DNA of 64,000 nucleotides, taken from Ostrea edulis. Taxonomy: Eukaryota. The stretch is taken from NCBI RefSeq assembly GCF_947568905.1, contig NC_079165.1, forward strand, positions 93,558,001 through 93,622,000. Direction: 5' to 3'. Made by a program: the position numbers and the translations under genes. Positions 1-64,000 of this stretch are shown in pieces (the stretch's first letter is position 1; each line of letters starts with the position of its first letter). Below the pieces are notes generated by a model. It ran no database searches and was not told the origin of the DNA. It was given only the letters and a program-made list of their open reading frames with translations.

Positions 1-1201
1 GAGCCTTAATGGTCCTATGAGGATCAGACAATATCTTAGAAGTGGTGTGTGTTAATGGTGCAAAGTGAGCATCTTTAAAATTCAGAGAAATGAAAGTCCT
101 TTCAGTAAAAAACGATGTTAAATTATTCTGATTCTGGTCATAACCAATAGCCTTTGTGCCATGTTTCTAGTACTAGTATTTTATTAGTAACATATAATTA
201 TATAGTGTATTCAGAAAAGATTCAGAATCAAATCATAACATCTTATATATTGACCTTCGTTCTTGTATGATCATGACACATTTATATATTGTACGATCAT
301 AAGCAACCTAATCTTGCTAATGAAGTATGAGCTACACTCCAGCTCTTGTGCTTGATATTCAGGCAAGACATTTACAACATTTACAACATGATCCTTATAG
401 CCCTGCCCTGAAACCTGATTGCCTAACCAATGTACCACAGTGTTGATGCACACCTCCACTTCAATGTAACTAGGAGCATGAGCTTCGTTTCAAAGCAGAA
501 GATATAAACATTTAAAACATTTTCACAGTACAATCTACATGTAATATAGCCCTGTTATTGGGCCTCAGAACCTCTTAACTTTATTTAAAGCCACGAATTT
601 CACAATTTTAGTAAAGATTTTCATGCTCAGTATGACTATACAGTACACACCAAATTTTTAAACCAGATGCCCAGGACTCAGAAGTCAGATTTTTAAAATA
701 AAGTGAATCACCATAACACTATGATATGCTCTTCATATGTTTATTCATTATAAACAGATAAAAAAAAAGTGCATGACACAAAATCATGTCAAACTGGTGC
801 AAAGATTGCATCAATAACTTTGTTTTTTTGTCTGAGGTAAAATCAAGATTATTCCTAATTGTAATGTGTTGTGTGTATTATACTGCATATTGCAACTGAC
901 TTGTCAATATATATACCTCTTGAATTGTTAAAAAGAATACAGAAATATTCCAAAACTTATTTTCATTTTATTACATATGCATGTATACACATAATTTCTT
1001 TCACATGGTATATATTACTTATTTTGGGTTACAAGTACAAATAGATTATACTCATTAACCAATCTTTAAATTGGACACATCTGATGTAATTTAGCTCTTA
1101 TCAAAATGATCTTTAAATCTCTAGATGAACTCTGAAACACCATGGCTAACTTTCAAGTAACCCGAGATTCCTCTGACTCTTACACCCCCCCTTGAGGATC
1201 T

Positions 1202-1338
1202 TTTACTCATATGGAGATGTTAACTAATTTCAAGTGAGGGGCTCCAATATTTAGGCCTATGCTGAGCACTTATGGCCTTTGAGCAGGAGGGGTCTTTATC
1301 CTGCCACACCTGTTGTGACACGGGGCCTAAGTTTTTGC
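1202..1338 (-). mobile_element. SINE family B fragment (bivalve SINE body)
   Basis: Reverse complement matches the SINE copy at 10492-10756 (ttaggcctatgct...gcctttgagcag...gccacacctg..gtgaca). Confidence 0.75.
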
Positions 1339-1349
1339 AGCATCATCAT

Positions 1350-1490
1350 CAGTTTACTCTCAGAAGGTCGGTGGTCTCTTCCCAGGTACATTGTATCTGG
1401 GTTCTCTCTTCCCCCAATAAAAACTGGGCGCCACCAGATAACTGAAAAATTGTTGAGTGTGGCAGAATTAAAACATCAATCAATCAATCA
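1350..1490 (+). mobile_element. 3' half of tRNA-derived SINE family A
   Basis: Near-identical to 30021-30159 (ggtcggtggtctcttcccaggtacattgtatctggg...ttgttgagtgtggc) with a (caat)n tail. Confidence 0.85.
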
Positions 1491-1869
1491 TATTCTAACC
1501 TGGATACCAATGGGACTGTTCTGTGGTGTACTGCTTTTTAAGTCTTTGCAAATGTTGTACATGTAGTACAATACAGCATATATTTCTATCATTAATGTTA
1601 GAAACAAAATAATTATTCATATCAATTGTTATGTAGCTACATTTTATGAAAAAAATGTGTATTTCCAGAATTGAGCAAGGTTAATGCATTACTCTCTAAA
1701 TATATATGTAGGGATTACCTCCCTTAAAACATTGGGTCGTTTTATTTTTAATACCATTCTTAAAGTTTTAATTTGGTTTTAAGCTACAATTTACATTTCT
1801 ATACAAATGCACAAACTGACTATTACGTTTGTTGATTCTTAGGACTCATATCTACATGAGCCCAAAAAA

Positions 1870-2233
1870 GGTTATGCCATAGAGGCCATGTCATCTTATT
1901 TATAGACCACATTGACCTTGATTAAGGGCATCACACTTTTTTCTTAAGATGCATTAACTGACTAAGTTTGATGATTCTAGACCAAATAATTGTCCAGGTA
2001 TGAGTCGGCCAAGATTTGCCATATTTGGCCATATTGTCTTAATCAAAGGTCACAAAGACCTAACTTTAAAGTGCAACCCACCCTCTACCCAAGATGTATC
2101 AGCTGAAAAAGTTCAATGATTCTAGCTGGTCTCATAGTATCTAAGTTACTAACCAGACATGAAGTAGGACAGACAGGATCGCCATTGATACCATAAACGT
2201 TCTTGCATCTAAATTTAAGACAGGCGTATAAAA
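1870..2233 (+). mobile_element. Degraded Helentron-type non-autonomous element
   Basis: tgaccttga/aagtttgatgattctag repeat motifs and a gacaggcgtataaaa 3' end, like the end of 56757-57193. Confidence 0.4.
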
Positions 2234-7350: not shown

Positions 7351-8945
7351 TGTACATGTATACAAACATAACTTTTCACGGAATTCAATCAACTCTCATT
7401 TCAGTATAATCTGACAAATGTTTCATTCCATATGGGCATATACTGCTCTGTGAGTCTGATCTATAAATTAGAACTCTACATCATAATAATGACCAACTTT
7501 CCTTTTGCAGCACAAATGCATGAAAAATATATTCATTGGTAGCTTAATTGGATTAAGGCACAAGGCTCTTCTAACCTATCATCATGAGTATGAGTCCCAC
7601 AGAGCTTTATAAAGAAATTCAATTTCCTTTCACTGCAATTTCCCCCCTAAATATGAGTATTAAGATAAATTTCAAAATTTCGAATTATCATAGATATCTT
7701 ATACTTTTCATCCATAACATTTTTCTTAAGGGTGCAAAGTGTTTTATATTTCCTTAACAAAACCTGTGTGACTGACATGTAATATGACCCCCTCTTGTCA
7801 TTTCACAATCCAACACAATCTCCATCCCTTCAAATAATGGACTTTGTTATAAATTCAAAGTGCTAAGTGTTAAATTGTCATGTATATGCTCTTCAAAATT
7901 GTCAATACCAAATTTAGGTCAGACTGTCTTTAGGTCATCATAACATATATTTCATTAACAAATGAATCCCTCGTAGACTAAAATACCATATTCATGAATT
8001 GGCACCTGACCTGAAAATCTCATTCTTAAACATGAAACATGGATTAGAGACTGAGCAAAGCATATTCCAAGTGTGATAAAGAATGCGGATAAGTAGGATC
8101 ATTATCATCAGATAGGCGGACCACCTGCATTTGAAATTATCCTCCTCAAAGAAATTTCCCTGATCTGATTATAAGGAAAGATAAGATGGAATATGAGGAA
8201 TCATCATACAGTGAAACCTACAAAGGTAATTGTCTTATTATGATGATGCAAATACCACTGATTTGCTAACAAGAATATCTCCAAACATATCCACCATACC
8301 ATGGTGTCAGAAAATTGATGAGTGTAAACATTTATACATGGAATGTCATATGGACTTTTGGTACACATCCAACACTATATACGACATGCATATATACACA
8401 TGTAAAACATATGTATCAGACATATTCAAAACAATGACAGTTTCAAAATGTTACACTACTTCATCTGCATAATCAATGTTTAATCAATTTGGCATGGGAA
8501 TGTTCATGTAAATTCTTGTACAAAGAATCACAGCCAAAGCAAATCAATACTATATAAACAAGAATGAACACATATTCCATGTATACACTAGTACAAGTAA
8601 TACCATATCATACAACAGTGTAAGATATCAGACTAAGAGACCATTACATGCAAGTTGAACATGACAACTATGATAAAGTTACAGTATCAATTTATGAAAA
8701 TTAAAATAATAATATATACAGAGAAATTTACATAATTGCCAAGAACAACATTACGCAAGTCTTCTTTAAAACTTCCACTGCGCAATTTAGCCACTTCAGA
8801 AATCTATGTCGGGTTTCTGTAATATTTTTGCACCATTTCAAATTGGTCCAGTGTCATAGGAGGGCAATGATTGAAGAACTAATTTATATATATAATATAA
8901 TATATATATATATATAAAGCACTAAATAATCACAACTTAGGTACT

Positions 8946-9179: not shown

Positions 9180-10491
9180 TTAGCAATATACACATTAACT
9201 TTTTAAATATAACTTGAATGTTTAAGTACAACTTATTCTCAAGAGAATGATGGAAGCATGCTATTTATTCTTATCATCTTCATGACCTTGAACTTGAGTT
9301 ATATCCTTGTCTTCCCCATGCTAGGAATGTATTCATCAAAATTAATTACTGTAATACTGCATTATCTGATGTCATTTATATCTAGAAACAAAACTTTTAT
9401 AATGTTGAAGTGCCTTAGACTTTGTCAATGAAAATGAAAAAAGAAATTCTCTCCCAAGTTATCACCTCCCCATATTACAATCTGCTATAAATCTGCTCAC
9501 CCTCCACAAAGAAACAATGAGTAAATATGAAAAATATGTCCATGCATCTGTGATCCATGAAGATCTAACAATGCATATTTAATAGTTTTCCCCTCATCCA
9601 ACCATTTTGCATTCCTAAAATCCATTGACAGTTTATTACAGAAACATATGAATACATCAGGACTGTAGTTCATCATTTCATTATCTACTTGTGATTGTGT
9701 AATTCTCCTGTAGGCACACAGCTTCTTTCTGCTCAAATGCATTTGTACAAAAACATCACAATTACAACATCATGAACATCTGTAGTTGTGGAATATTGGG
9801 TTACAGATGTTGGGCTGTAGTTACTGGAGTCAACACATATCTAAATCTCTGGAAAATCAGCACCTAATCAGCAATACTGTGAGACACACCCTTCTAATTC
9901 CACTTTCCTAATTCTAATCAAAATGAGAATATCATATTGGCTATTAAAACACTTATAAAATGATAAAATCTCTGATTATATATCAAATATGTTATTTAAT
10001 CAAAGCTTAACCACCAGGTAGTAAATTTACACTATATAATACAGCATACACGTACAAATTTGCACATCTTTTGACTCCTATAAGTATGTTTAAGTTTTCA
10101 GGTCATCATTGTTATGTTCATGCATTTCATTTATCATGTTCCATGCAGATATATAGCGTATACTTGAAAAACTTCATATTAGTACGTACTGTAATGCATT
10201 ACATGTACTACATGACTATGCACACAGAAATCACAGAATGATTTTGTTCAACTTAGCTTTTGGCAGCATTTATATTTATGAACAATTTCAACCCTAGTGC
10301 GAATATCATTCAGCAAAATATGTAAGTCAATCGAAATATCAACATGATCAAAGTTCTTTATCAAATTACGAAATTGTCTATTTTAAGTTAAAGATTTGTT
10401 TACATTTCTTTTCAAAAATTCTTTTAAAAAGCATGAATGATATATAACAATCTTGATAGAGACATCTATTCTATAGTTCTACCAATCTCAT

Positions 10492-10756: not shown

Positions 10757-11142
10757 ATTTCAAATACATGTAGTTACTTTCAAAGACACTCTGTCATAAA
10801 ATGGTTAATTTATTTCAATGTATTCAATTAAAGTGCTGGTTAGAAATATAAAGGAATCTAAATGCATAAGCCAAATTAGCAAATGTAGTAATCTTTTATT
10901 TCCTGGCAATTCACCATCAGTTCAAACTTTCATTTGAAGGACCGATCTAGTCATTGCAAATGCAAAATTTGTCATGTCTCTGTCAGCACAGGGCCGAATG
11001 ACCATGCACACCATAATGGTTTCAAACACCGATTGTCAGACATTGCACCATATTGGATCTGTATCTGCATCATTTGAAAATTGTCAGTCATGATATAAAA
11101 AGAAGCAAGCCCACTGCGATATGGCTATACAAAGCAATACAA

Positions 11143-13836: not shown

Positions 13837-16800
13837 CATGTATATATATCCTTTCATACTAATGACAATACAAGACGAATGCTTCAATATTATATCTATA
13901 ACTTTAATCATATAATACTACATAACACTTGTTCAAAGAAAAGAAACACTACTAAAACTTAGTTGGTGATATAGACAAGATTGTAACTTCAGAACGTGCA
14001 ATGACCAACATTAGATGTGTTTCTGTTAATATGGCCAAACTGATAATCGCCCAAGCTAATTTCTAATGACTAACCCACCCCTTCATTCAATGTTAAATCT
14101 GACATTAAATGCACATATAGGCTTATCATCCCCAGTGACATCACATTAGTGCATGTGTAAATTGGATTTACATTATTGATTGAATGTGTGATTTTATGAT
14201 GTCCTTAAATTATAGATTCGAACTAATATGAAATACTATATCATATGTAAAATACTGCACACAATACTTTAAATCCAATTTCTAAGCCACCTCCCTTAAA
14301 ATTTAACTGGACAAGGATAAAACTTGTCAATCATATAAGAGACAATAGCTCAGGTCCTGATTGACAGCTATAACCCAGAGAGTCACCTGGGTATCCCAGA
14401 CCAGAATGTGTTGATGGCAACAAGCTGACCTTGCAAAGTCATTATAGATATACAATGACCCTATACCACTTTCTCTAATCATGGTAGAAGCAATTACACT
14501 TCATTACCATCTTTTCTCACCACTTCCAACACCTTCAGCACTTCAGTATCTGATCCAATGTGTTACTGCCACACAATCAAATTTTTTCTTAATCATTTAT
14601 AGCAATGCTGATGATTCCCTCAAAAAAACTTCAGGAAAATATGTCCTACACAGAGGAACATAGAGGATTGGCGATTCTAGGATGCTGGTGATAATTGGTC
14701 ATGGCAGCAGGCTAGTGGTGTTTGCTTGTTTCATGCACATTTTTGTGTCTTCCTGGGGAGGACAAAGGGTTGTTTTTAATGTCTACCATCCTGTGAACAA
14801 GAAAGTGCTGTCGAAACCATCCCATCACTTTGGGCATTATCATTACTGATCTCTGTCAAGGAGGGCTGCCACAAACCCCTGTCCTTTGAGACATTGAAAA
14901 ACTGATAAGAAATCTTCTGTCTTGTCAACTTCAATTGAAATTAAACTAAGGGTGTATTCCCAAGAGGACTACTTTTACAACTTTAGATATTAACCAATAA
15001 CAATACTGGACAGTAAGAAGTGTGTTGGCAATTATGTCCAGACCAGACAGGGTTTGTTGGCTGTATAATATTGTATCTGGCAGCAAGACTACATTCTGGT
15101 GATCCTAAATTGTGTACAATCACACATCAGAAAGCTGTTCATGTTCTATAAATATTTATACATCATCTGTCTACAGCAACCTTGAGCTCCTTGTGTGAAT
15201 GCTGGAATAGTTTATCATACAATTTTTAAGCACCAATGAAATATTCATACCACACATTATCAATGTCTAACTGGACAAACAGGGCATTAGTTCACGAGCC
15301 ATTTTTGTGAGCATTCAGCAGTAATTGCAGTCTTTTGTGTCAATTTACAACTTCATAGCTTTAAATAAACAGAATGTGCAGTGTATCAGGAATTTCTATA
15401 ACAGTATTTTGACGAAGCTGATCTTTGCATCATGAAACAGATGGGTTTTTTACCTGCATATTCTCTTTGTCTTTTACTGTCTCAGAGAATTTATCAGAAT
15501 TACATAAATCTCTTTAGAAAGAAAGCATCAAATTGTACATGAATTGCCGAGATATCTAGTTCAACAGAAATCATTCACTATACCAAGCAATTTGATGAAC
15601 AGATTTCATAACTTGACATTTCAAACAATGATAGAAATTTTTCCTCTTCTAAATTTATTCATTAATGTGTACTAATAATGTGATACACATACAAATATTT
15701 GTAGCTTATGATACTCTGCACTAGTACACTGGGTAATCATAATTGTAGTAGTCAGTGCTTGAACATTTCACATTTCCCTGTAGGTTATCAGATGAGTTCT
15801 GATCATCATGGGAATTTTTCAGTGTCTGTAGCTGTCTGGGTTTTATTTCCATCCTCAGTACCAGATGTTCTGAATATGTTTGAGACACACTAATGACAAA
15901 GCTACCCATAAACCATGTCTCATCTTGGCTGATGACCCAGAACACACAAGGGTAAAGTTCACATCACACATCTGTCATACTGACAATCCATGTGCAATCA
16001 TAATTCATCATCTTTAAGGTGTAGTTTGGTATGCAGTCAAAAGGGTACATACAGTCTAATTATGATACAACTATGTTGTGAAATACTTACAAAATATTCA
16101 ACATACAACCATCTGAAAATGCTAATTATCTTACATTTTACTACAGTACCATTCTGTGTACATATTATGAATTATGAAATAAAGATCTAACCAGGACTTG
16201 ATTGCCTGAAGAGCTATGAGTCATTATGCTGTTGTTGCATTACTCTACAATACCATAATTCAATTCTCCATCACAAACTGTCCTGTCAAGGATATTGATT
16301 CTACAAGTATGAAATTTCCAGAATAATACAACAGGCGTGCACAGAGAGACCAAAATAAATTCACTGATATCCCACATCCTGAAATCTGCAAAAGGCTAAC
16401 GACACCAGGGGAAAACAGGCAGCTACAGAACCATTCTACTGATGACCAAATGAAATCACTGACATTAGATGTACCTAATAAAAATTGCTCAATATGTATC
16501 CTACAGAAGCATATATACAATTTCGTCTGGTACTACTTGCTTAATATTAGGTTCTTCAGCAAGAGGAAATAAAGGGTCTAAACTACATTTTCTTTTCTGA
16601 ACTACCATTGCTGTCTGTATACTGTATATATGCACTTATAGGTATCCATACATGTAATACTTTAAAAAATCAAGTTTTAGACTTTTACAGATTGCAATAA
16701 TTGTAACAAATCAATGCAAGGAACCCAGTTGCCAGAGCATTCAACATTCCCTGCCAAAGCATGCACTGCATCAGCGAGTTCACCCTTCAGTATCTCTGCC

Positions 16801-17819
16801 ATGTGAACAATGCTTTTTAACAATGTCTTATCTCACTGTGATAGCCATATTGAAAGCTTCAAGACAGCACCTGCATCTAATTACCTCCAGTGACAAATGA
16901 GAGAACACAACAGATAGGAAGCAGAACTTTGTGGTATTGAGTTCAACTTATAATTGCTATGATTAGAAATTATTGCTCATATGAATTTACGGCACTGATT
17001 TGTACTAGGATTATATGTACAAATGTTAACTTCAACACAAGCATCACTATTAGTTCTTACAGGCATATCTGTGCTAGTTGAAGTTTTTCATGACAAATTT
17101 TACTTCTGACATAGAGAACTTCAGATGGAATGTGGTATTTTACCGTATTTACATAAGAGAATACCTATAGATATAGTAACTACAGGCACCTTATAGAATA
17201 CATACACTTGGTACATTATACATGTACCAGTGAAACTGCTTGGCCAATTGGAATTTCTAATTACACATGAACTTTGAATGCATACTATTGCTACCTGACA
17301 AAATCTCACTTTATCAAGTTCCACTTGAGTTTCACAAGTGCATGAATATCGAATCAGCACTGTAGTAGGTACATGTAGTACACTCTATACATTTGTATTA
17401 AAGCAGACATACTTCAGCACCCACTATAAACCCACTTATACTAAGTAGTTCAAATCATTGTCATTTCCTCAAATTCTAAAGCCTTCATAAAAGAAAAAGT
17501 TGAACAGATTTGTAACTGGATACATGTGTAACTGCTTCATGTAGATCTTTTAAGCATGCCGTGCTACTGAAATAGGAAAATCCTTAGGACGTACGTACCT
17601 TTACATGTCTACAATATTTATATCACTAACTAAAAGTCTAATAACGCTATATTTGCCAAGAACTTCAGAAAAAATTGGTAAGCACTAAGAAAATCCCTTG
17701 GGTCTTAAGGATAATATTGTGTTCAGATGCAGAGGGGCCAGTTTCTCTGTACATCTTAGTATGGTAAATTTATCAAACATTTACAGGTCTTCCTAATATC
17801 CATATGGCTTTGGTAAAGT

Positions 17820-18474
17820 GTGACCGGTGTATAACAAATGTATGATTTTCAAAGTACATGTATAGCTGTACGCTGTTTAAATCATGATATGATTTTCTGA
17901 TAATAGAATGATTCTAGTTCAAAATTTTACACAAAAAAAGATAGCTATTTAGTAGAAAAACATAAAATTAGACCCAAATACCATGTTGGTTTTAAGTCAT
18001 ATTGGACGTAACAAGGAATTTAAAACTGCATTTTTTCATTTTATACGAAGGCTTTGCTTAAATAGATTTTTCTCTAACAGTTTACAAGATCTTTAATTAT
18101 AGTATATATGATTTTGTTAATTTATCATAAATTCATTAGCTTGTAAGTTTGAAAAATATTGAAATATGTCGGACAAACAGAGACATTTTAAAATTAGAAT
18201 TTGTTCAATTTGCATCATCCAAAGTCAATGAAGAAATCAAAATTATGTTGTTTATACCAGTATCTACAGCAGGTGTTCTTCAGCAAGAGGGAAAATGTGA
18301 CCATTTCAAACTGGTGCATATCCGAATTAATATTTTTCTATGATATTTCATGTTTAGTGTCAAAAACCTTGTCAGACTGTTATATTACCTGTAAAACCTT
18401 TTTACCTAGTTGCAATTCATAAAAATATAGGTATACAAACACAAATTTGATTTGGTGTTTTCAGACCATGTCAC
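17820..18474. mobile_element. Possible MITE with short tgtgac...gtcaca TIRs
   Basis: tgtgacc at 17820 and catgtcaca ending near 18474; AT-rich interior; no TSD resolved. Confidence 0.3.
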
Positions 18475-21567: not shown

Positions 21568-22740
21568 ATGAAAGGTGAAGATAACGAATAGTGATCAATC
21601 TCATAACTCCTATAAACAATACAAAATAGATAGTTGGGCAAACACGGACCCCTGGACATACCAAAGGTGGAAAATGGTGCGTAGGAGGAGTAAAGATCCC
21701 CTGTCGACCGGTCACACCCGCCGTGAGCCCTATATCTCGGTCAGGTAAACGGAGTTATCTGTAGTCAAAATCAATGGGCCAAGAATGGTCTAACAATCGG
21801 TATGAAGCACGTCAGACAGCATTTGACCCAATGATAGGTTGTATTGGCAAACTAGATCGTTTCAACGACTTTAAAACTGACCGTGCATACGCAGAACAAG
21901 TTCTTGCGTATCGAATCAGTTGAGAGATATAAATACAATATGCAGGTGATAATGGAATATTGTTGCATGAATATGGGAAGTTGACGATGGAGAGACTGTA
22001 ATCATCCCGTTTGTCATAGAGTTGAGTTGGTAGTTTGCCGTTAACATCTACTTTCAATAAGATATCCAAGTATGAAGCAGAAGTAGACGACTCTGTGGTG
22101 AAAGGTGAAGATAACGAACAAGTGATCAATCTCATAACTCCTACAAGCAATACAAAATAGATATATATAGTTGGGCAAACACGGACCCATGGACATACCT
22201 GGGATAGGATCAGGTGCTTAGGAGGAGTAAGCATCCCCTGTCAACTGGTCACACCCGCCGTGAGCCCTACATGTATATCCTGATCAGGTAAACGGAACGT
22301 CTTTTATTTCTAGTTCATATAGGGATATATCGAATCGACATATGAATGAAAGTTATTATTGTTAATAGACAAAACGTCGTCGATATATCTAAATGTTGCA
22401 TTGAAGGCCACAGCAAGATATTTTTTTCTTCTCGCGTAGAAGTTTTTGAATAAAATCTGCTTCATATCAATATAAAAACAGGTCGGCTAACAAAGGAGCA
22501 CAATTCGTGCCATGGGAATTTCTTCAGACTGTTGGAAGACCTGATCACCAAAGACCACGAAGATATTGTCAATGAGGAACTCTAGCATATTTTTTATTTC
22601 AACTTCAGAGTACTTGTGCGTGGAATCAGAGTGGTGTTTAACAAAATAATTTTTTGGATGACTGATCTTTCCGTTTTCCATTTTTTGCTGAAGAAGCAAC
22701 TGTGTATGGTGTCAAAAAATCTAGTCTTTAATTTATTATA
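21568..22740 (-). mobile_element. Penelope-like retroelement (Naiad type), 5'-truncated RT plus 3' UTR, with nested self-insertion
   Basis: Translations KNMLEFLIDNIFVVFGDQVFQQ..IPM and TTESSTSASYLDILL..QLYDKRDD..IVNFPY..SQLIRYAR; 3' end shared with 24868-25548 and 34599-36530. Confidence 0.88.
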
Positions 22741-23249: not shown

Positions 23250-24522
23250 TCTTGTCACGACCTCGTCTGTTGACCACTCTCTTGGTCTTAGTTCTTGTCA
23301 CGACCTCGTTTGTTGACCACTCTCTTGGGGCGGATGGGAAAAGAGGAAGACATCCTTTCTTTACAAATTCTGTTGCTTTCTTTTGGGCGTCAGTCTGTTT
23401 AATCTTCGTCTCTTTTTCAATGGACTTATCTTCTGTCTCTTCAGTCTTGGGTTCTTCTTCTTCAAGCTTGCCGCTCCCTTTCCTGGGTATCCCTGGTATT
23501 GGTGGACTCCTTATCTGCCTCTTCCTGGTTCGTCACCTTTTTCTTCGATTAGAATGATGCTTGATGTTGATGGACTACCAAGGTAAGTGATGTTCTTTTG
23601 GGAACATCACCAAGTCTTGGAACTTTTCTTTGCAATCAGTTGACATCTGCTTTCGAAATACATGTACGTTTGAAGAATCTTTCTTCAAACCCAAGTTAGG
23701 AAGCAATTGCCGGAATGTCGCTTCTACTTTCCACATGGTAAAACTGACCTCTGGTGGCTTACACATTGTTGAGATGGGTAGAAAGAGCATACGTCTGAGT
23801 AAGTTGTCCATAGTCTTCTTATTACTTAGAACTTCATTCATTACTGAGCTTTGCCCGGTACCCCTGTGTTCCATTCCCCAGCTCCAAGATGAAATACACA
23901 TTGTAGGCTCTATTAACCCTACATCCGATACTAAGATATACGAGGTCTAAACCTTCCATGACGCTAGGCCTGTTTGGACTGCATCCCTTCTTCTGTGGCT
24001 GAGATGGTCTTCGTATGTTCATGGTATACACCTCCCACACTTCTTCCCACTCCTCAATTGATCTAGATGGCTTCTTCCTCCTGGTTACAGCTAATTCTAT
24101 CTGGTGCCTCCTTCGATTCTGCTGGACTCGGGTTGATGGCGGTCTTGTACATCTCATGGTGACAGGGCATCTAAAACCCATTGTTTTCAGACAAGAAGTT
24201 CCTTGGCATTAACTCCAAGGGGACCTGTAGCGTTTTAAGATGTGATCCTTGAGGTCCACCATCCAGCTAAATACTTGTTCTGTGAAACAGCAAACACGGA
24301 GTACTGTTATAGCATCCTATGAGAGGAAGCTGCAAGGTGGTTCTTTAGCTCTCTCCTGTTCCTAAACACTTTATGGCATAATCTACATTCTAAGTCTCCG
24401 TCGGCAGGCCGCATAGATAGATCTGCAGATTCAAAACATCTAATATTAGTTGTAATCACTTTGCAATTAGCTTCAGAAATGACCATGTTTAAGAGAATTG
24501 TAAGAAAATGTACATCCTCCAT
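23250..24522 (-). pseudogene. Decayed ORF with C2H2 zinc finger and K/R/E-rich tail, probably the extra ORF of the Gypsy element
   Basis: CRLCHKVFRNRRELKNHLAASSH fits C-x2-C-x12-H-x5-H with F and L at the canonical positions. Frameshifts and stops follow. Same strand as pol, downstream of integrase. Confidence 0.55.
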
Positions 24523-24867
24523 CCATGTAGATAATCAAGTTATAAGCCACATCCTTCCATTCATATTTTACATACATGTAATGCTTTAACATATATGTTT
24601 CTGTCAATCGGTCGTGTCTAATTCTTTGTTATTCTTTGCAGGTTTTTTTTTTGGTTTTTTTTTTTTTTGTTTTTTTTTTTTTTTTGTGGAGCAAGAAAGG
24701 TTACCACTCAGATTGATCATCTGATTTTAAATAATTTCATTCCATTTGTCGGATAGAACTAATCAATATTGTGGATTTCCAAAATACAGACCGGTTCAGC
24801 TCCAGTCAACTGTTCATCTTCATAACCTGATCTTAATCTAGTCGACTGCTACATGATATTAATATTA

Positions 24868-29170: not shown

Positions 29171-29191
29171 AGTGAAACACAAAATTTGTAG

Positions 29192-29373
29192 GATTGATCG
29201 ATTGATTGATGTTTTTCGCCACACTCAACAATTTTTCAGTTATCTGGTGGAGCCCAGTTTTTATTGGTGGAAGAGAGAACTCAGATACAATGTACCTGAG
29301 TCCAGGGAAGAGACCACCGACCTTCCTCATTGATTTTGAGAGCGATGCTCTAACCACTAGGACATGAAGGCCC
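29192..29373 (-). mobile_element. tRNA-derived SINE family A with internal deletion
   Basis: Reverse-complement match to the head and 3' half of 29908-30159. Confidence 0.85.
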
Positions 29374-39652: not shown

Positions 39653-40545
39653 CTATAAAGTCAATTGAACAACAACACATGTTAAACGGCACTACTTATA
39701 CGACATAATGCACCTATTTGGTGAATAGTATATTATTCCTGAAACATTACAGTGTGTGCAAGTTTTCTGTTATATTGTTGTTTTGGTATGTGTGTTTAGC
39801 TCAAGTGAGCTTTTCTGATTGAAATTTGTTCGCTGCCTGTCCTCCTCATCATAAACTTTTCACAATTTTATCTCCTTCTCCAGAACCACTATGCTACATT
39901 GTAGTATCAGCTAACCTTGGTACAGAGAATCCTTGAGTGAAGGGGATTCAAGTTTATTCAAATGATGCGTCATCAACTTCCCTTCTAAAGAGACTATAGA
40001 GAGATAATAAAAAGGCAAAAACTAGGATGGGTCATTTAAAAATCTTCTCAAGAATGAATGGGCCAAGAAAGATGAAAGTTATGTGGAAGCTTTCTGAAGT
40101 ATGACGATTCATTTATAGTCTGTCAAAATCATGCCCAGGGGTCAGATGGGGCTACAATAAGGAATTAAAGTTTTACATAGGAATATTTAGGACAAATTAA
40201 TCTTTAAAAACAAAATTCTTCTTCTCAAGAACAGCAAGGACATAATTAGTAGTGATTGATGGGCAGTCGGGGGGAAAAAGTTAATCGATAAATCGGATTA
40301 ATCAGTTGCACCTTTACGATTGATTAATTGAAAAATAATCGTTCTCAGTCATTTCAAATTTATTGCATCAATATATTTTTCCTTTATTTTACCCAGAATT
40401 ATCTTAATTAGAATAAAATCATTAAATATTAGAACAATTAATAATCTCATACATGTACTTTCGATTTTGTTTTCCCGAGATAGGGACAGATCTCTTGACC
40501 TTTACCTTCGTCAACAATTTTCACGACAGGAATATTTGTATTATA

Positions 40546-41785: not shown

Positions 41786-42999
41786 TTTACTCAGGTAACC
41801 TAAAAATACACCGATGTGGGAGATTTTCAATTTTCAAAATGAAAATTGATTGTTCACATCGTTTCAATTATAGGGACCGACATCGAAAGTCGGCGATAAA
41901 CAGTACAACACCAATAATTACAGGCAAGCATCCTCTGGTAGTGTAGTTTCAAGTTTGTTTAAATCATGACCTCAGAGGTTAAGGTGGGATCAAAATAGAT
42001 TGATAAAGTTTTATAAATTTTATAAGGGGAGACTTTAAACTATAAAAACTTTTTTCTCAAGAGCAACAAAGCTGTAATGATTAGTCAGATTTCAATCCTA
42101 GCATTGTTAAGGATTTACATGAGTTTCAGATATTTGAATTTGACCCACTGGGGTAGGATGGGAGGACAATATGGTGTCAAAGTTTTACATATGAATACAT
42201 AGTGTGTAAAGTCTTTAAATATTCACCCCACGAACAATAAGGCTATAATCAGTTATGAAGATAAGCAATGCAGATTCCAGTTTATTCAAACCATGGCCCT
42301 GAAGGGTAGGGTGGGCCACAATAGGGGATACAATTTTTACATGGGAAACAATTTTTAATAAAAAAAACATTCTAAAGAACAGCAAGGCCACCGTTATTCA
42401 TTTTAATATTCAAGCATCCTTAGGTACTGCAAATTCAAATTCTTCAATCATAACCGGAAGAAGATGTTGGGAGTGGGGTGGGTGGGGAGTTAGGATGGAG
42501 CTTCATGCAATCAGGGATCAAAGTTTTACGTAAGAATGTATATGAGAAAATCTTTAAAACTCTTAATCATAAGAGTATCAGGACCAGAGTTAGTTAAGTT
42601 AGAATTAGTTAAGAGTAGTAATGATCATGCAAATCAATGTCCCAAGTGTAAGTTTGGACCACACAATAGATTCAAACTTTTATATGGAAATATATAGGGG
42701 CAGAATTTAAATGTCTTCTCAAGAACAACAGGGCAATGAATAGTATGCAATCATCCGTAGGTACACTGTAGTACAGATCCAAGTTTGTTTGAACCATTGT
42801 CTCAGTAGGAAGGTTGGAGCCACAACAAAGATCAAAATTATTTACATGGAAATATAAGATAAATTTCTTTTAGAAATCTTCTACACAACACTGGCCATTA
42901 TTAGTTATATTAATTAATATGCAAGCATTTCAATGTAGTGCAGTTACTTTATTGGGGTACATGCATGTACATAGGTACTGGTAAATAAATCAACTTTAC

Positions 43000-51106: not shown

Positions 51107-53237
51107 TGGTATTAAACTGATGTACGTAACTGCAGTTACGTACTCCCAAGATGGCAGAAGAAGAAACATGAATTAGAATAGCGATGTTTTTGTCTTTTAG
51201 AAAGCAAAGTGAAATACACTTCACGAAAGAGGATGTCTATTTATATCAATAGTTCACAATTGTACCCAAAGTCTTCATGATACTGTCCCGAATTTGCCGC
51301 AATCGGTATTTGAAATACGTAGATTGATGTACGTAATTTTCACAATATGAAGTACGTAACTTTCCAATTTGCAGATAAAATATGTACGTAACTCAAAAGA
51401 TCTCCATTAAACTTTTATTCATTTGTTCATTCAAAAAGTCCGATAGAATGTCTTCATCAATAAAAATCACATATTAAATAATGCTACCAACATGCCATCA
51501 AATCAAACTTTCAATTCAAGCTCTTTTAAGAGGACTTAGGAACGTCCTTTCATATAGATCTACGATGTAGTACCTATAATGCTGTAAGTTAAAGAGCAAT
51601 CAATCAAAAAATGGATAAACTTCTTTCAAAGTACGCAACAAATATTCTTCAACGGTAACCAAACTCGTTAATTAATGTATGAGCAAGTACAGCATCTACC
51701 ATGTTTTTGTAACAAAAGGATAAGGGACCGGTCATTTAACTTGGATTTAATGGGGGAGGGGGTGTTCGCGACAGAATTTTTTCCGCACTCAGCGGGCGAC
51801 TATTTTTTTTTTTTTTTATCAATTTACCCTTTGGAACAATTTTTTTCCAGTTTAATTTTGCATTACTTTTATCTGGGACTACTATTACTGCAAAACCTTG
51901 CTTCAGATAAAAAAAATTCTATTTTTTCTGCGCCATTTTTTTTTTCGTCAGCAACAAAATTAAAAAACAAACCAAAAAACATAGCCCCTTTCCACAAGTT
52001 ACATGGTTGGTCCCCAGGCAGAATGAACAAAAAGTATTTTTACACACCGAAAATAACAGATAAATCAAATGAATGTAATAGCATGAGCGGTTTGTCCACT
52101 TTATCTTTTCTATGATTGATACTTTGTTAATATTGCTATTCTTTTTGCTTTCTTTGATTTCGACGTGTTACAACACTTATGTATATCATGAATATGCAGA
52201 CGAGAACGTGTGAAATGATATTAAAATGATACATTAATTGAAGGTAATTAATTGTATTCGGATAAAACAGACTCTGAAGCTCTGAAGATCACATGAAAAT
52301 TTTTCAGGGAAGTTAATTCCAGCAGAGTAAATGAGTCTACGTAGTATTGCAGCAAAAGAATACCAAACAAATCATGTTTGTCAACGTACCCTAAAGAAAT
52401 ACCTGGTAAACACATCCCCCAAATATCTATGCACATTTTTACACCCCCCCCCGCCCAAAAATAATAATAAAGAATTACTGAAAATCTACATAACCTGAAA
52501 AATATAAAACATCAAGATCTTCTAAGCTTGTGAAACATTCATACAAGTTGATGATAATGATGTAAATTTCTCCTTTAAATTTTTAACCCCTTCAAAATAC
52601 CAAGAACACCAATCTCAAAACATCCATTTTACCTACCCCCCCCCCCCTCCCCCGACAGAAATACTACGGTTTTGTTGGACCTCCAAAAGACATCAAAATT
52701 CAAAATTTGTCCTCCCAAGAATAGGCATAGTCTTTAAATGGTTCAAAATTTGGAGTAATACCACCCCCCCCCTTCTTTTCCCCCTGTGTGCAGCATCTGT
52801 TCAAATATCTCAAGAGGTTATAGAATGACGTTTTTCTTATATCGCTAATGGCATTCTTTCTCTGCCACAAAGTACATGTATGTGCATTACTTCTCTGCTT
52901 GTTTAGCTGCTTAGAAAGCAAGCTTTAGGATTTGTCGAACTACGAGTGAATTGCACAGTTACGTACATCATAAAGGAAAATTACGTACATCAACCAAAAA
53001 TACTTTAATGAGTTACGTACATCACGTGTGTTCTTACACAGGAGTTTAACTCGTCCATTCAGGAGAAACAGACGGATTTTACCATTCTGGACGATAAAGC
53101 GTAAAGAAATACACAAACTTGACTAATTAATATCACTGAATAGGATAAGATATAATCTAAATTGAAAAATTACTCGTTTCTTCTTCCGCCACCTTGGGAT
53201 GTACGTAACTGCAGTTACGTACATCAGTTTAATACCC
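51107..53237. mobile_element. Non-autonomous TIR DNA transposon (MULE-like) inserted in the 21/22-bp array
   Basis: About 65-bp TIRs (ggtattaaactgatgtacgtaactgcagttacgtac..) and inverted subterminal gatgtacgtaa motifs; TSD not resolved. Confidence 0.7.
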
Positions 53238-54843
53238 TAACCATAACCCTGGAGTTAGTTATCTCGTTATAACGACTTGACTTACTCTTGAGTTAGCTCG
53301 AGAAGTTGGATGTTGACTTGCCTAAATTCTTGACACGCATATTTTTTATGCGTGTCAAGAATTTTAGACAAGTCAACTTCCAACTTCTCCTCCAGCTGCC
53401 CCCCCCCCCCCATTCAATTAGAAAAACTCGATGCTATGTGCCAGAAAATGATAATATATGCCTGCTAGAGCTGCCTAGTACATGTATATCTCCGCGAATG
53501 ATTAATGCATGGTTTTTGATGACCTGACATTAGATGTATGTAGAGCATGCATCTAGCCTTGCCGATTTTTCGCTCGAATACCAATTGAATTATAAAAATG
53601 AAAATCCATTGTTGCACAATTCGACTAACTATGAAAACGATACATAATAATTACATTACTTCTGAACAAACTCAGTCTTTTTGTTGAATTAAAAAAAGAA
53701 CGTCGTCACATATTCAATGTTTGGAGTAATAAATATTTTTTCATCATCTTAACGATGACATAGTCTTACATGATATTCATCGTAAAATAATCCATCAGCC
53801 AGATATTTGATTTTCTCATATAATCACCACTCAGTGGGTGGTTTCCCCCACACTGGATATAAAAAATGATTCTATGACTTCATTTTGGGCGATTTGATTA
53901 ATTTGTAATCGTTATGTTGAGTTTGTGGAAAGATAATAAATGTCCTTTTGATCTAACAATTTCATAGATACGAACTTGTTATGATGAGGTAACTATACCA
54001 TTAAACTCTTTATAACGAAATAATTTTAAAAGTCGTTATAACAAGATGTAAAATAACTCGTTTTAACAAGGTATAACCTAACTCGTTATATATCGAGATC
54101 ATTAATAGCTCATTACATAACGAGATAATGAATTCGTTATAACGAGATACTAGCTCTTTATATAACGAGTTGGATTTTCTTTACTTGTTCAAAAACGAGC
54201 CTATCCGGCTTTCGTACGTTATGTCCATAAAAAATTGTTTCTATCTATAATGATAAGATATTTATATAATATCACTAGTACTTGATATACTTCATTAAAT
54301 ATGTTACTACAAATGCCACCTACAACATACTTCAAGATGAAGAATTAAAATAATCTCGAGGCATTCATTTTAATTATTCTTGCTAAAGTCCTCAAAATTG
54401 AAGGAAGCAGTCTGAAGGGAGTGGGGTTCAATCAATAATGTCAAAAAAAATCTTCGAACATTCCAGTATACTAATCTACTTCATTTGAAATCTTTATTCA
54501 GATACCATATTCGCTTTGATTACGAAATTACTGTTTGGCGGGAAATATTTGCTGTTCAAAGGACGATTAGCACATTTGTGTAGGTTGTTTGGAGTGTGAT
54601 CTAGACTAAAGGGCGATAGGAAATATGATCACGAATTACAAGCCTTAATATTCTATATAATCAACTAAACTTGTTCATAAATTTTAAATATTAAGGACTT
54701 AGATTTAAAAAAAGAAAAAAACCCGGAAACTTTTTTTCTTTATAGAAACCTTTGATCTATTAGACCCTATATTCTTTACATGTACTTGGGCAGTTTGAAA
54801 TAGTTCCGTAGTTTCTACACTCGAGATTAAATCCACGACTAAT

Positions 54844-58253: not shown

Positions 58254-58675
58254 GGGAGACCCCACATCATAATTGGCACCTATGACACCACAGCCTATTT
58301 GGCTACATCTCATTGTAGACTGCAACATTATAATTGATGGACACAATGTGATGTCCGTAATAAGACTCTCAAACCCGAGAAAATCCCAAGGTGTGATGTT
58401 ATTTTCTATTTTTTCCCCAATTTCTCCAACAAATCTCCATTATTTGATGGATGAAATATTTAGAATAAATTTAATGCATAGTTCTTTGGAGGTTTAAATA
58501 TTGGTGGTACCGTTTAAGTAAATATACATGTATGCTGATAAAATGCAATAAAATTAGTGCGAGGGTACAAAGTGAAATAGTTTAACATTGAGGCAAAGGT
58601 CATATCCCTATGACATATGAAGTTCACACATGTATCTTATTTGAAGAGTTTTGAAAAAAATATCATTGACATTTT

Positions 58676-60545: not shown

Positions 60546-61851
60546 GAGCCCCACCCTAGCACCAGAACTCCTGATCCAGGGGCCATGAATTTCACAATTT
60601 TTAACAAGAGGTACTGTGAGCAATGCTCACTAAGAATACCCCCCGCTTAACCCAATCTCCCAAAGGGTGTTGGTAATAGGTATAAACTACCTCTTTTCTA
60701 AGTGTTGCTACTTCGATGTCCAGTGCGCATGACCTTTGACCTTTTGACCCCAAAATCGATAGGGAACATCTTCATCCCATGGGTAGTCCATATGTATGAT
60801 ATGGTGACTGTAGGTGGAAAGGATAACGCTTTAGAGCCTGGAAACCATATTGCTACTTCAATGTCCAGTGCGCTTGACCTTTGACCTTTTGACCCCAAAA
60901 TCGATAGGGAACATCTTCATCCCATGGGTAGTCCATATGTATGATATGGTGACTGTAGGTGGAAAGGATAATGCTTTAGAGCCCGGAAACCATATTGCTA
61001 CTTCAATGTCCAGTGCGCTTGACCTTTGACCTTTTGACCCCAAAATCGATAGGGAACATCTTCATCCCATGGGTAGTCCATATGTATGATATGGTGACGG
61101 TAGGTGGAAAGGATAACACTTTAGAGCCCGGAAACCATATTGCTACTTCGATGTCCAGTGTGCTTGACCTTTGACCTTTCGACCCCAAAATCGATAGGGA
61201 ACATCTTCATCCCATGGGTAGTCCATATATATGATATGGTGATGGTAGGTGGAAAGGATAATGCTTTAGAGCCCGGAAACCATTGCGTCTACAGAGAGAC
61301 GAACGGACGGACAGCCCGATTCCAGTATACCCCCCCCACAATTTGTTGTGGGGGTTATAAAGAGGCATCCTTGCTCATCATTACCATGCTATTAATTTGT
61401 CTACTTAATACCCAGAGACAGAGAAGAAGATTTTCAAAGAATTTCTACATTTTCACTATATGACCAATAGAGCCCCACCCTAACACAAGAACCCCTGCCC
61501 CAGGGGGCCATGAATTTCACAATTTTGGTAGAGGGCTCAACGCTCATTATAATTATGCCCACAGTTTGGCTTCTTGATGTCCAGGAGTAAAGAAGAAGAT
61601 TTTTTAAAATTACACTCATTTTGATGGTTTTTGCCCCACCCCTCAGGCCCCAGGGGGGCAGGGACCACGAATTTCACAATTTTTGTTCCCCTCCACCCAC
61701 AGATGCTATATGCCAAAATTGGTTGAAATTGGTTCAGGGGTTTCAGAGAAGAAGCTGAAAATGTTCAAATGTTAACGCATGACGCACGTCGCACGACGAA
61801 CGACAAAAACAGATAGCAATAGGTCACCTGAATGAATTCAGGTGACCTAAA
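60079..61851 (+). mobile_element. Second Helentron-type element abutting the first, containing a nested third element
   Basis: Head aacaagaggcccaggggccttaaaggtcacctgag; end ataggtcacctgaatgaattcaggtgacctaaaa. Confidence 0.85.
60603..61360 (+). mobile_element. Nested Helentron-type element with four 145-bp repeats
   Basis: Head aacaagaggtactgtgagcaatgctcac; ttgctacttc at 60705, 60850, 60995, 61140; 3' cccccccacaa..ttgtggggg hairpin. Confidence 0.85.
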
Positions 61852-62962
61852 AATATATAAATCAGATAAATTTGTGAAAATAACGTTTTAGTAAATTTTC
61901 ATGTAACATTGATTATATTTTGTCCACATCACAAAAATCTGAAAAGATACAGAAAAAATATTGATTGCAGTGGTATAACTAGGTTTGAAATATTTGTAAG
62001 CAGGTGGTCTGGGGGGCGGTAGCCCCCCAGAAGCTGAGAACATTTTTCGCAATATGTAATAAAAATTTAACGAAAATATTTGTAAGCACGTACTTACAAT
62101 GTAGCTATGCCACTAGATTGAGTATCCATTCCAAATAGTTTGAATTTTTAAAAGAACTTAACTTCAGATAAAGTCCAACAGGACTGATGTAATGTTAATC
62201 TTCATGGGAAGCAACACTGTCATACCTACATGTGTAAATCTCTCTGCAATGACATGTATATATGGAGGGTCAGTTGCTGACAAAAAGGATCAATTTTATT
62301 AGTCACAAAAAGAGCCTGCAATAATTTGCTACCAATTACATCCTAAGTATTCTTCCTACTTCATCAGTTGTTTTACATCAATTGATTTAATCATAATTAT
62401 CAATCAGATTAATTCTAAAAATGAAATTGAAAGCTTGCCCAAAAGATCTGGCCATATCACTGAGTATTCTTGTCCCAAGAAAACCTTTCTGGAAAAAATA
62501 CAGCTAACAGCAAAATATAACGATAAAAGAGCACCATTCATACAGCACATGTACAAATAACAACAGAATACAAGCTTCTCGTATCTAACTATAAAGCATC
62601 CCAGTCAATCTCCTTGAAATCTGCATTTAATTTTCATGATTACGTCTTATATGATATTAATGATAAATGATTATTGATAGATTATCCCCCCCACCCCCCT
62701 CTCTGATTGATGTGTTGTAAATCATCATGATTCAAAGAAAAAATAAAACATCCAATAAAATATTTTTATCATTGTATAAGTGAACCTAAAACAAAGTAAG
62801 CTGCAAAACTGCAGCTTTCTGGGGATAAATGGAAAACAAAAACTATTTATACAGCACATGCACAAGTAACAAGAGAATGCAAGCTTCTCATATTCAAAAG
62901 TTCCCAACTTTTGAAACAACTTAATAAATAGTTTCGTGTTGAATACCCTGCTGTTTCAACAC

Positions 62963-63500
62963 AAAGAGGCCCATGAGCCACAATGCTCACCTGAGTCGAA
63001 CTGCTGCTACTGTTCATCAGAAGATTTAAAAACAAGATTTTTTACCCTCATTATTCCCTCAAAAATTTTTGAACCCATATCATGACCCCCAACTAAGCCA
63101 AATGGGGTCATGACTTAAAACTCAACTTGAATCCATACAACATATGGATGCCCTATATTCATGTATCATGTAAAATTGTTATCCCTGATTCTAGCCCCAT
63201 CCAAACTCCATAAATTTTCAAATTTCCCCCCCATACATTTCATGTAAAACTTGAATTTATATTATGACCCAAACCTACCACCAATTGATTTTAACAAACT
63301 TGCACCACCTGAGGATGCTTGCATATCAATATGACTTATCATGACCCTGTTGTTCTTGAGAAGATTTTAAAATATTTTCCCCTACATATTTCAAAATATT
63401 GAGCAGACAATATCTTCCTATGTCCTGAGTGGATTGACCATGTGACCTAAAATTCAATAGGTGTCATCTACTCCTTATGCTGTACCAGTGTATCAAGTTT
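62963..63500 (+). mobile_element. Degraded Helentron-type element
   Basis: aagaggcccatgagccacaatgctcacctgag head and degraded units. Confidence 0.55.
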
Positions 63501-63668
63501 GGTGTCCAATATATCCAGAAATGCTGTAGTAAACAAAGATAAGATCACTCTGACAGTAATTGCTGCAATGTTCCCCAAGAGAGTTACAGTTCAGTAGCTA
63601 CCCTCCTCAACAAAACCACCACTTGCACAATTGAACATAAGATTACCAGTAACAATAGAACATTGCTA

Positions 63669-63887
63669 TCATGTATCTGATCCTTTCTCATATCTATTTT
63701 GCATCAGTTTAATGAGCAGAAATGCCTTGAACAAAATTTTGCGATCATCTTGCTTTAAAAAATTGTAATGTTTACTGAAGTACAGAATAGGTCTATTCAT
63801 TTCCTTTAATTTCACATTGCCAGCACTATTTCCGAACTGAATTTTCTCCATACTTGATTTTTCCACTTGAAGAAAAGTCATCTGTAC
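63669..63887 (-). CDS. Possible exon of a gene extending beyond the window
   Basis: Strong aatttcttttcAG acceptor at 63888; phase 0 is open to 63669, and phase 1 gives a short terminal GTDDFSSSGKIKYGENSVRK*. The frame cannot be determined. Confidence 0.3.
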   Translation of the reverse strand, partial: VQMTFLQVEKSSMEKIQFGNSAGNVKLKEMNRPILYFSKHYNFLKQDDRKILFKAFLLIKLMQNRYEKGSDT

Positions 63888-64000
63888 CTGAAAAGAAATT
63901 TTAAAAGAGAGTTTCAAAATAAAAGATAAATACTGATGAATGAACAGAATTGAGAACTTATGAAATCATATATACATGTAAATGTCTTTAGGATACATAT

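What the first reader, a model, noticed from the sequence alone, without database searches (positions are those of the whole stretch)
536..63971. TACATGTA palindrome about 10-fold over-represented, consistent with a large record of Tc1/mariner excision footprints
Seen: I counted at least 26 exact TACATGTA sites by eye (e.g. 536, 1558, 7353, 10200, 10765, 16649, 17370, 17855, 22268, 30412, 37319). A rough composition-based expectation is about 2-3 in 64 kb. At three sites inside recognisable repeats the motif is a net CATGTA insertion after a pre-existing TA (next three findings). Established: Tc1/Tc3-type elements duplicate TA, have CA...TG termini, and can leave TA-CA-TG-TA when the staggered ends are filled in on excision. 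Inference: a very active TA-targeting family has left footprints genome-wide, acting as a 6-nt frame-preserving mutagen. I cannot say whether this has already been described for this species.
Basis: partly seen in the sequence, partly recalled or inferred. Interest (0 to 1): 0.8.

Follow-up and report, generated by a model that had tools for sequence, protein, structure and literature searches.

The report
Oyster TACATGTA transposon-excision scars
One eight-letter palindrome, TACATGTA, is six to twelve times too common in this stretch of oyster DNA because six letters (CATG plus a second TA) have repeatedly been added at plain TA sites, most likely the scar a cut-and-paste jumping gene leaves when it departs.

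Summary
TACATGTA occurs 27 times. Dinucleotide shuffles expect 2.2 and order-3 Markov simulation expects about 4. Of 51 ACATGT cores, 27 carry exactly T..A flanks, and every other flank pair occurs 0-4 times. The 27 sites have unrelated flanks and are not part of any repeat consensus.

Where sister repeat copies exist, they read plain TA. Site 22268 is a clean +6 insertion. Site 37319 is +12, two 6-letter units. Site 32084 is a weak third case.

The transposon-scar reading is the best explanation, with four corrections:
- It is not the classical Tc1 scar. The +4 forms TACATA/TATGTA and the Sleeping Beauty +5 forms are not enriched. The nearest precedent is the 6-bp Minos footprint.
- No source element or transposase is in the window.
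- Eight sites checked in 4-12 other individuals are all fixed, so "very active" is not shown.
- The compound form TACATGCATGTA is fixed at 42958. It also segregates against TACATGTA in a second oyster-like population dataset. This hints at 4-letter self-complementary CATG overhangs, or simple CATG duplication.

The scan found this before on other DNA of this genome (s1-306964 and three first-reader notes). I found no published description.

The parts
536..543 (.). TACATGTA site
   Evidence: unique flanks
1558..1565 (.). TACATGTA site
   Evidence: lies 68 nt beyond a SINE copy, not inside it
7353..7360 (.). TACATGTA site
10200..10207 (.). TACATGTA site
10765..10772 (.). TACATGTA site
   Evidence: next to a repeat copy, but sister copies do not reach this position
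16649..16656 (.). TACATGTA site
17219..17226 (.). TACATGTA site
17370..17377 (.). TACATGTA site
17855..17862 (.). TACATGTA site
22268..22275 (.). TACATGTA site shown to be a +6 insertion at TA
   Evidence: Three sister copies (21590+, 25493-, 36509-) read GAGCCC-TATATC where this copy reads GAGCCC-TACATG-TATATC (A1). The query collapsed to TA aligns without gaps to two of them.
23659..23666 (.). TACATGTA site
24573..24580 (.). TACATGTA site
28490..28497 (.). TACATGTA site, fixed in 4 individuals
   Evidence: single-copy contigs 28262-28735/28807 bridge it, and the gaps reported lie elsewhere (28736, poly-T)
30176..30183 (.). TACATGTA site, fixed in 4 individuals
   Evidence: 16 nt after a SINE tail
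30412..30419 (.). TACATGTA site, fixed in 4 individuals
31848..31855 (.). TACATGTA site, fixed in 4 individuals
   Evidence: contigs 31675-31905, 0 gaps
32023..32030 (.). TACATGTA site, fixed in 4 individuals
   Evidence: only 1-nt indels at 32031/32033 beside it
32084..32091 (.). TACATGTA site, weak case of +6 at TA
   Evidence: Collapsing to TA raises the alignment score to the copy at 22739 from 30 to 36, but this ties with another 6-nt deletion position. Fixed in 4 individuals.
32536..32543 (.). TACATGTA site
   Evidence: lies in a multi-copy stretch, and no 6-nt omission is listed at 10% share or more, so its state in other copies is unresolved
37319..37332 (.). TACATGTA plus a second unit (TA-CATGTA-CTTGTA), a +12 insertion at TA
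   Evidence: Two sister copies (10660-, 1258+) read AGGCC-TATGC where this copy reads AGGCC-TACATGTACTTG-TATGT.
37891..37898 (.). TACATGTA site
40450..40457 (.). TACATGTA site
42958..42969 (.). Compound form TACATGCATGTA (two CATG units between two TAs)
   Evidence: 1 observed vs 0.03 expected. The same form segregates against TACATGTA in L145/L150.
52873..52880 (.). TACATGTA site
53479..53486 (.). TACATGTA site, fixed in 12 individuals
   Evidence: L001-L012
54777..54784 (.). TACATGTA site 60 nt upstream of the GPCR ORF, fixed in 12 individuals
   Evidence: The 80%-identical relative L013 reads TGAATATA at the aligned position, with the same length (weak alignment).
58525..58532 (.). TACATGTA site
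63973..63980 (.). TACATGTA site

Best explanation
The TACATGTA sites are excision scars of one or more TA-targeting cut-and-paste DNA transposons (Tc1/mariner/pogo superfamily, or another TA-duplicating family) whose ends read CA...TG, possibly CATG...CATG.

Proposed steps:
- Insertion duplicates the target TA.
- On excision the transposase leaves the element's terminal letters as 3' overhangs on both flanks.
- End-joining then seals TA-CA and TG-TA into TA-CATG-TA, a net gain of six letters.

The product is unusually uniform. I infer either that both 2-letter overhangs are always kept, or, more economically, that the cut is staggered by 4 letters as in Minos. The two CATG overhangs would then be self-complementary and ligate like restriction-enzyme sticky ends. 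Occasional joining without annealing would give TACATGCATGTA.

Shown here: the specific enrichment, the TA..TA frame, insertion polarity at 2 sites (perhaps 3), and fixation in the sampled individuals.

Inferred: the transposon origin, the stagger length and the identity of the element.

The scars look moderately old. They are fixed in the population. They have little excess of one-mismatch derivatives (implied decay about 0.06 per site, not significantly above 0). At 22268 and 37319 they are absent from sister repeat copies that are 80-90% identical.
For: - Enrichment: 27 sites vs 2-4 expected.
- Flank specificity: 27 of 51 ACATGT carry T..A flanks, other flank pairs occur 0-4 times. Only a TA-preceded CATGTA is enriched (54 vs 15.6).
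- Flanks are unrelated, and no motif is shared between sister repeat copies.
- Insertion at a pre-existing TA: +6 at 22268 against three sister copies, and +12 as two 6-letter units at 37319 against two sister copies. A weak third case is at 32084.
- The sites are real in independent Illumina-based contigs of 4-12 individuals from several studies.
- TACATGCATGTA is fixed at 42958 (1 vs 0.03 expected) and polymorphic against TACATGTA in a second population dataset (2 of 19 contigs).
- Literature: Tc1/mariner excision leaves 3' overhangs and footprints equal to the first or last 2-4 nt of the element between two TAs (PMC6943129). Minos leaves a characteristic 6-bp footprint (PMC3386967).
- The collapsed sites show a weak A/T-rich context (A/T 77% vs 66% at +2/+3, p about 0.015 uncorrected).
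Against: - The window holds no element with TA|CA..TG|TA ends, no shared sequence after TA|CATG, and no transposase ORF.
- Only 2 firm cases and 1 weak case out of 27 could be polarised.
- The canonical products of the best-studied relatives are not enriched: Tc1 +4 (71 vs 70.3) and Sleeping Beauty +5 (12 vs 11.9).
- No presence/absence polymorphism at 8 sites bridged by single-copy contigs in other individuals, so no sign of ongoing activity.
- At 54777 a distant relative has an 8-letter stretch of the same length (TGAATATA) rather than a 6-letter gap, though that alignment is weak.
- Between repeat copies in the window, 6-letter gaps as a class are not in excess.
- There is no significant clustering that would indicate local hopping.
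Confidence: 0.6

Rival explanations
1. A mutational process that is specific to TA sites but is not a transposon. For example, a host nuclease or repair pathway repeatedly adds CATG(TA), and short-unit tandem duplication then produces the CATG-CATG and CATGTA-CTTGTA forms.
For: No source element or transposase is in the window. The CATG unit number varies within a population, and a 6-letter unit is doubled at 37319, as slippage would produce. The product is far more uniform than the transposon footprints catalogued genome-wide in rice (PMC4423477).
Against: I know of no process that adds one fixed tetranucleotide at TA. TA + element-end letters + TA is exactly the transposon footprint architecture (PMC6943129). 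At 22268 there is no local template for CATG.
Confidence: 0.15
2. TACATGTA is a functional palindrome, such as a transcription-factor or other protein-binding site, kept frequent by selection.
For: TACATGTA is a known binding site of a MYB-related factor in Phytophthora (PMC11134190). All sites checked are fixed within the species. The exact word shows little decay.
Against: The sites are spread at random over TA positions, with no positional bias. They arise by 6-letter insertion, not by substitution. The one site next to a gene start (54777) is not conserved in the 80%-identical relative. A density of about 0.4 per kb in repeat-rich intergenic DNA is implausible for a regulatory site.
Confidence: 0.07
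3. The excess is a composition or context artefact: CpG decay producing CA/TG, TACA/TGTA microsatellite-like sequence, a repeat consensus, or an assembly artefact.
For: Order-5 and order-6 Markov models nearly absorb the excess (ratios 1.5 and 1.06). TACA/TGTA-rich tandem arrays are present in the window.
Against: High-order models in 64 kb are circular, because their 7-mer counts consist of the 8-mer itself. The flank table (27 of 51) and the order-3 simulations (maximum 11 of 200) exclude a composition effect. Flanks are unrelated and no site lies in the satellite. Independent short-read contigs reproduce the sites.
Confidence: 0.02

Closest known systems
Minos (Tc1-like, Drosophila hydei) 6-bp excision footprint
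   Same: Both are a net +6 scar at a TA target: the duplicated TA plus four letters from the element's end. PMC3386967 calls it a 'characteristic six bp footprint'. The 4 terminal nt + TA composition is from my memory of Arca et al. 1997, which I could not read.
   Different: For Minos the four letters come from either end and are not palindromic, so there are two products. Here a single palindromic product (CATG) dominates, the element is unknown, and the scars number about 0.4 per kb of genome rather than appearing as laboratory events.
Tc1 / Tc3 of Caenorhabditis elegans
   Same: TA target duplication, CA...TG termini, and 3' overhangs left on the donor (PMC6943129).
   Different: The canonical Tc1 scar is +4 (TATGTA or TACATA, 78% of somatic events; PMC12632400). 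Those words are not enriched here (71 vs 70.3).
Sleeping Beauty / Frog Prince / ZB canonical footprints
   Same: A uniform, NHEJ-made scar of TA + terminal letters + TA (PMC6943129, PMC7913693).
   Different: The Sleeping Beauty scar is 7 bp in total (TACAGTA/TACTGTA, +5). ZB leaves 0-3 bp. Neither form is enriched here (12 vs 11.9).
Genome-wide DNA-transposon excision footprints in rice (Roffler and Wicker 2015, PMC4423477)
   Same: Excision scars recognised at genome scale by comparison of related sequences, with Mariner/Stowaway elements at TA.
   Different: In rice there are a few hundred events with heterogeneous, often complex footprints. Here there is one fixed word at very high density that distorts the 8-mer spectrum.

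Membership tests
Tc1/mariner-superfamily excision footprint | The scar sits at a TA target and is framed by two TAs, where the ancestral state was a single TA | tested here: met
   Sister copies read a single TA at 22268 and at 37319. 27 of 51 ACATGT carry T..A flanks. Only 2-3 of the 27 sites could be polarised.
Tc1/mariner-superfamily excision footprint | The inserted letters equal the first/last 2-4 nt of an identifiable element (PMC6943129) | tested here: inconclusive
   No TA|CA..TG|TA inverted-repeat element and no shared sequence after TA|CATG in the window.
Tc1/mariner-superfamily excision footprint | A DDE/D transposase of the superfamily is present | tested here: inconclusive
   18 ORFs of 85 aa or more were scanned against Pfam. 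Only a 7tm_1 GPCR was found. One window cannot show absence from the genome.
Tc1/mariner-superfamily excision footprint | Allelic or orthologous series: empty TA / element-filled / scar | tested here: not met
   Eight sites bridged by single-copy contigs are fixed as scars in 4-12 individuals; a ninth, 32536, lies in multi-copy sequence and is unresolved. No filled or empty allele was seen. The sample is small, and contigs drop rare variants.
Classical Tc1 (+4) footprint | TATGTA/TACATA is the predominant product (PMC12632400) | tested here: not met
   TACATA/TATGTA 71 observed vs 70.3 expected.
Sleeping Beauty-type (+5) footprint | TACAGTA/TACTGTA (PMC6943129) | tested here: not met
   12 observed vs 11.9 expected.
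Minos-type 6-bp footprint | Net +6 = TA + four terminal letters | tested here: met
   The length and frame fit. TACATGCATGTA is what two unannealed 4-nt overhangs would give. The stagger itself is not testable from sequence.
Transcription-factor binding palindrome (e.g. PsMyb37 site TACATGTA in Phytophthora) | Positional bias near genes and conservation at orthologous positions | tested here: not met
   Placement over TA sites is random. The site upstream of the GPCR is not conserved in L013.

The most novel reading that the evidence does not exclude
Oysters harbour, or harboured, a TA-specific cut-and-paste family whose ends are the self-complementary tetranucleotide CATG, and whose transposase cuts with a 4-letter stagger. 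Every excision would then leave restriction-enzyme-like sticky ends that religate almost deterministically to TACATGTA. This would leave a genome-wide, countable fossil record of hundreds of thousands of excisions: about 0.4 per kb here, seen on several chromosomes and in a second oyster-like population. Such a record would let historical transposition flux be measured directly from a single genome.
Probability: 0.25. Interest if true: 0.75.

Novelty: new variant of a known kind. Interest (0 to 1): 0.55.

Why it matters
Excision scars of DNA transposons are usually rare and heterogeneous, and they can only be seen by comparing genomes. Here a single scar word is frequent enough to be the most over-represented dispersed 8-mer: about 0.5% of all TA dinucleotides in the window carry it.

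If this is confirmed genome-wide, it has three consequences:
- It gives a direct count of past excisions, something copy numbers cannot give.
- It implies a very uniform repair outcome, which constrains how the element cuts and how oyster germ cells join breaks.
- It identifies a recurrent +6 (or +10, +12) in-frame mutation class in a highly polymorphic aquaculture species.

It also warns annotators that this palindrome is not necessarily a regulatory motif.

Tried and rejected
- High-order Markov test. Rejected as circular in a 64-kb window.
- Search for TA-flanked inverted-repeat elements and for shared sequence after TA|CATG. None found. The excess of non-palindromic TACATG comes mainly from two tandem arrays.
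- The very abundant repeat at 29.1-30.2 kb as a possible source. It is a tRNA-derived SINE, so it is not a candidate.
- Pfam scan of 18 ORFs for a transposase. None found.
- Metagenome scan with a SINE 17-mer, meant to collect many repeat copies from a related oyster.
- Cross-species polarity at 54777 using L013. The alignment is too weak to decide.
- Target-site context and clustering. Weak or not significant.
- An apparent 290-nt presence/absence block in L134-L153. It is a contig-end artefact.
- CpG decay, local template duplication and hairpin P-nucleotide models. Rejected because the ancestral state is a bare TA with no local CATG template.
- Literature searches for a prior description. 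Nothing relevant to oysters was found. The primary Minos paper is not held.


Full report
**Observation**

TACATGTA occurs 27 times in the window. Dinucleotide-preserving shuffles expect 2.17 (maximum 7).

The most frequent 8-mers in the window come from a single 48-nt satellite at about 43.4-47.3 kb. No motif site lies in it. After masking it, order-2 and order-3 Markov expectations are 2.5 and 4.2. Order-3 simulations give 3.9-4.3, with a maximum of 11 in 200 runs.

This is circular in 64 kb, because 54 of the 72 TACATGT counts come from the palindrome itself.

The decisive table is conditional. Of 51 ACATGT cores, 27 are T-ACATGT-A, and the other 15 flank pairs occur 0-4 times each. Among CATGTA hexamers, only those preceded by TA are enriched (54 vs 15.6). 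The flanks of the 27 sites are unrelated.

The assembly gaps lie more than 800 bases from any site and are irrelevant to the finding. I did not fill them.

**Polarity**

All-against-all comparison of the window puts only one motif inside a well-aligned repeat. It is not shared by any sister copy, and no motif is shared between sister copies anywhere in the window.

- **Site 22268.** This copy reads GAGCCC-TACATG-TATATC. Three sister copies read GAGCCC-TATATC. The query collapsed to TA aligns without a gap.
- **Site 37319.** Two sister copies read AGGCC-TATGC. This copy reads AGGCC-TACATGTACTTG-TATGT, which is TA followed by CATGTA and CTTGTA, two 6-letter units.
- **Site 32084.** Collapsing improves the alignment, but this ties with another deletion position, so it is weak.

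As a control, 6-letter gaps as a class are not in excess between repeat copies. One of nine independent 6-letter events is TACATG.

**Population data**

Public runs labelled 'oyster metagenome' or a coded organism hold 71-82% of the words of a 4.2-kb stretch. An earlier scan note calls the genome a flat oyster, which I did not test.

- Contigs of four individuals from four studies bridge sites 28490, 30176, 30412, 31848, 32023 and 32084. None omits six letters.
- Twelve further contigs around the intronless GPCR gene all keep sites 53479 and 54777. Their five indels are of other kinds.

So the scars checked are fixed, and current activity is not shown.

One-mismatch derivatives are barely in excess (70 vs 58.5 +/- 7.5). 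This implies a mean decay of about 0.06 per site, not significantly above zero. The scars therefore look older than the population's common ancestry. The two polarised scars are absent from sister repeat copies that are 80-90% identical.

A JGI metagenome contig, 80% identical across the GPCR, reads TGAATATA at the aligned position of 54777 with no length difference. That non-coding alignment is too weak to weigh.

**Source element**

None is in the window:
- There is no inverted-repeat element with TA|CA..TG|TA ends.
- There is no shared sequence downstream of TA|CATG. The excess of non-palindromic TACATG comes from the 29-nt and ~165-nt tandem arrays.
- There is no transposase among the 18 ORFs scanned.
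- The hugely abundant repeat next to site 30176 is a tRNA-derived SINE.

**Which known scar does it match?**

- Tc1/mariner elements leave 3' overhangs, and NHEJ footprints equal the first or last 2-4 nt of the element between two TAs. Sleeping Beauty gives TACAGTA/TACTGTA (PMC6943129).
- Tc1 itself gives TATGTA/TACATA in 78% of somatic events (PMC12632400).
- Here those words are at expectation (71 vs 70.3; 12 vs 11.9).
- Minos leaves a characteristic 6-bp footprint (PMC3386967).

So the architecture is that of the superfamily, but the product is not the canonical Tc1 or Sleeping Beauty one. The length matches Minos.

**A new clue**

The window contains TACATGCATGTA at 42958 (1 observed vs 0.03 expected). 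There is no internal TA, so two successive TA-targeted events cannot make it.

Contigs of a related GPCR locus come from a different population study (GC 33%; none of the runs that hold the window's gene). They carry TACATGTA about 250 nt after the gene in 17 contigs, and TACATGCATGTA at the same place in two. One of these contigs holds a second TACATGTA, making 2 of 5 ACATGT in 3.9 kb.

Two conclusions follow. The phenomenon is not confined to this window or, apparently, to this species. And the unit between the TAs behaves as CATG.

Two readings fit:
- Self-complementary 4-letter CATG overhangs that normally anneal (+6) and sometimes join unannealed (+10).
- Ordinary tandem duplication of CATG after the scar formed.

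I cannot separate these here.

**Other tests**

- After collapse to TA, the sites show depletion of A at +1 and A/T of 77% vs 66% at +2/+3 (p about 0.015, uncorrected). This is in the direction of Tc1/mariner target preference but weak.
- The sites are not significantly clustered.

**Prior knowledge**

Full-text searches found no description of this motif or of mass excision scars in oysters.

The nearest published analogue is the rice genome comparison. It found a few hundred events with heterogeneous footprints (PMC4423477).

Within this scan, the same over-representation was noted by first readers on four other pieces or windows of this genome. One follow-up (s1-306964) reached the same reading. 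These are unchecked notes and I do not count them as independent evidence.

**Verdict**

Transposon excision scars at TA are the best explanation (about 0.6). They are of a +6 type that differs from classical Tc1. The source is unidentified, current activity is not shown here, and only 2-3 events are polarised in this window.

If the density holds (extrapolation), there would be a few hundred thousand such scars per gigabase.

Noticed in passing
window 43378-47300: A 48-nt satellite of about 80 copies (~3.9 kb, copies 90-95% alike). It produces artefactual ORFs of up to 1264 aa on both strands and accounts for the window's most frequent 8-mers.
   Followed up: partly
window 38561-39040: A 29-nt tandem array (unit GCAGTCACTACATGCTATAGATTTAACTG, about 17 copies, 96% alike). 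It inflates counts of TACATGCTA and related words.
   Followed up: partly
window 58784-59852; related copies at 11663-12029, 33038-33319, 39799-40232: A ~165-nt tandem array with dispersed single or partial copies elsewhere in the window. It recalls the satellite-like arrays carried by Helentrons in the Pacific oyster (PMC7492417). I did not test this.
   Followed up: no
window 1350-1490 (+), 29192-29325 (-), 29909-30160 (+): Copies of a tRNA-derived SINE (tRNA-like head GGGCCTCCGTGGCCGAGTGGTTAGAGCATCG, (CAAT)n tail). The summed contig depth in the reads is 10^5-10^6, so this is one of the most abundant families in the genome.
   Followed up: partly
window 54844-56121 (+): An intronless 425-aa rhodopsin-family GPCR ORF (Pfam 7tm_1, E 2e-17). 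It is 100% conserved in 10 individuals, with two variant alleles. The closest other proteins are 69% and 46% identical.
   Followed up: partly
window 26202-26587 and 27061-27446: An inverted repeat with ~390-nt arms, 87% identical, about 470 nt apart. It carries the CGAAACGA-rich words that top the 8-mer z-score list. Its nature is unknown.
   Followed up: no
window 21568-22736, 24872-25522, 35430-36538: A repeat family of more than 1 kb, present in at least three copies. Two of them are in inverted orientation around 22.7-24.9 kb. It contains a 140-aa ORF (21812-22234, -) with no Pfam match. Another scan note calls 22860-31450 a Gypsy element, which I did not test.
   Followed up: no
window 32667-32790: A dense nest of palindromes built from AGAGATATCTCT units. 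Reads show length variants here (skips of 175-198 nt with replacement letters).
   Followed up: no
window 56181: A 12-nt presence/absence polymorphism (ACCGGTTCAAAA next to ACCGGT) that separates 7 of 12 haplotype contigs from the reference.
   Followed up: no
window: 21086, 11443, 63172, 60122, 63675, 24850, 53767: TACATGATA (= TATCATGTA) occurs 7 times in unrelated contexts against about 1.6 expected. It may be a minor scar variant with one extra letter.
   Followed up: no
window 50729-51103 and 60705-61283: Two further tandem arrays, with periods of about 44 and about 145 nt and copies 92-97% alike.
   Followed up: no
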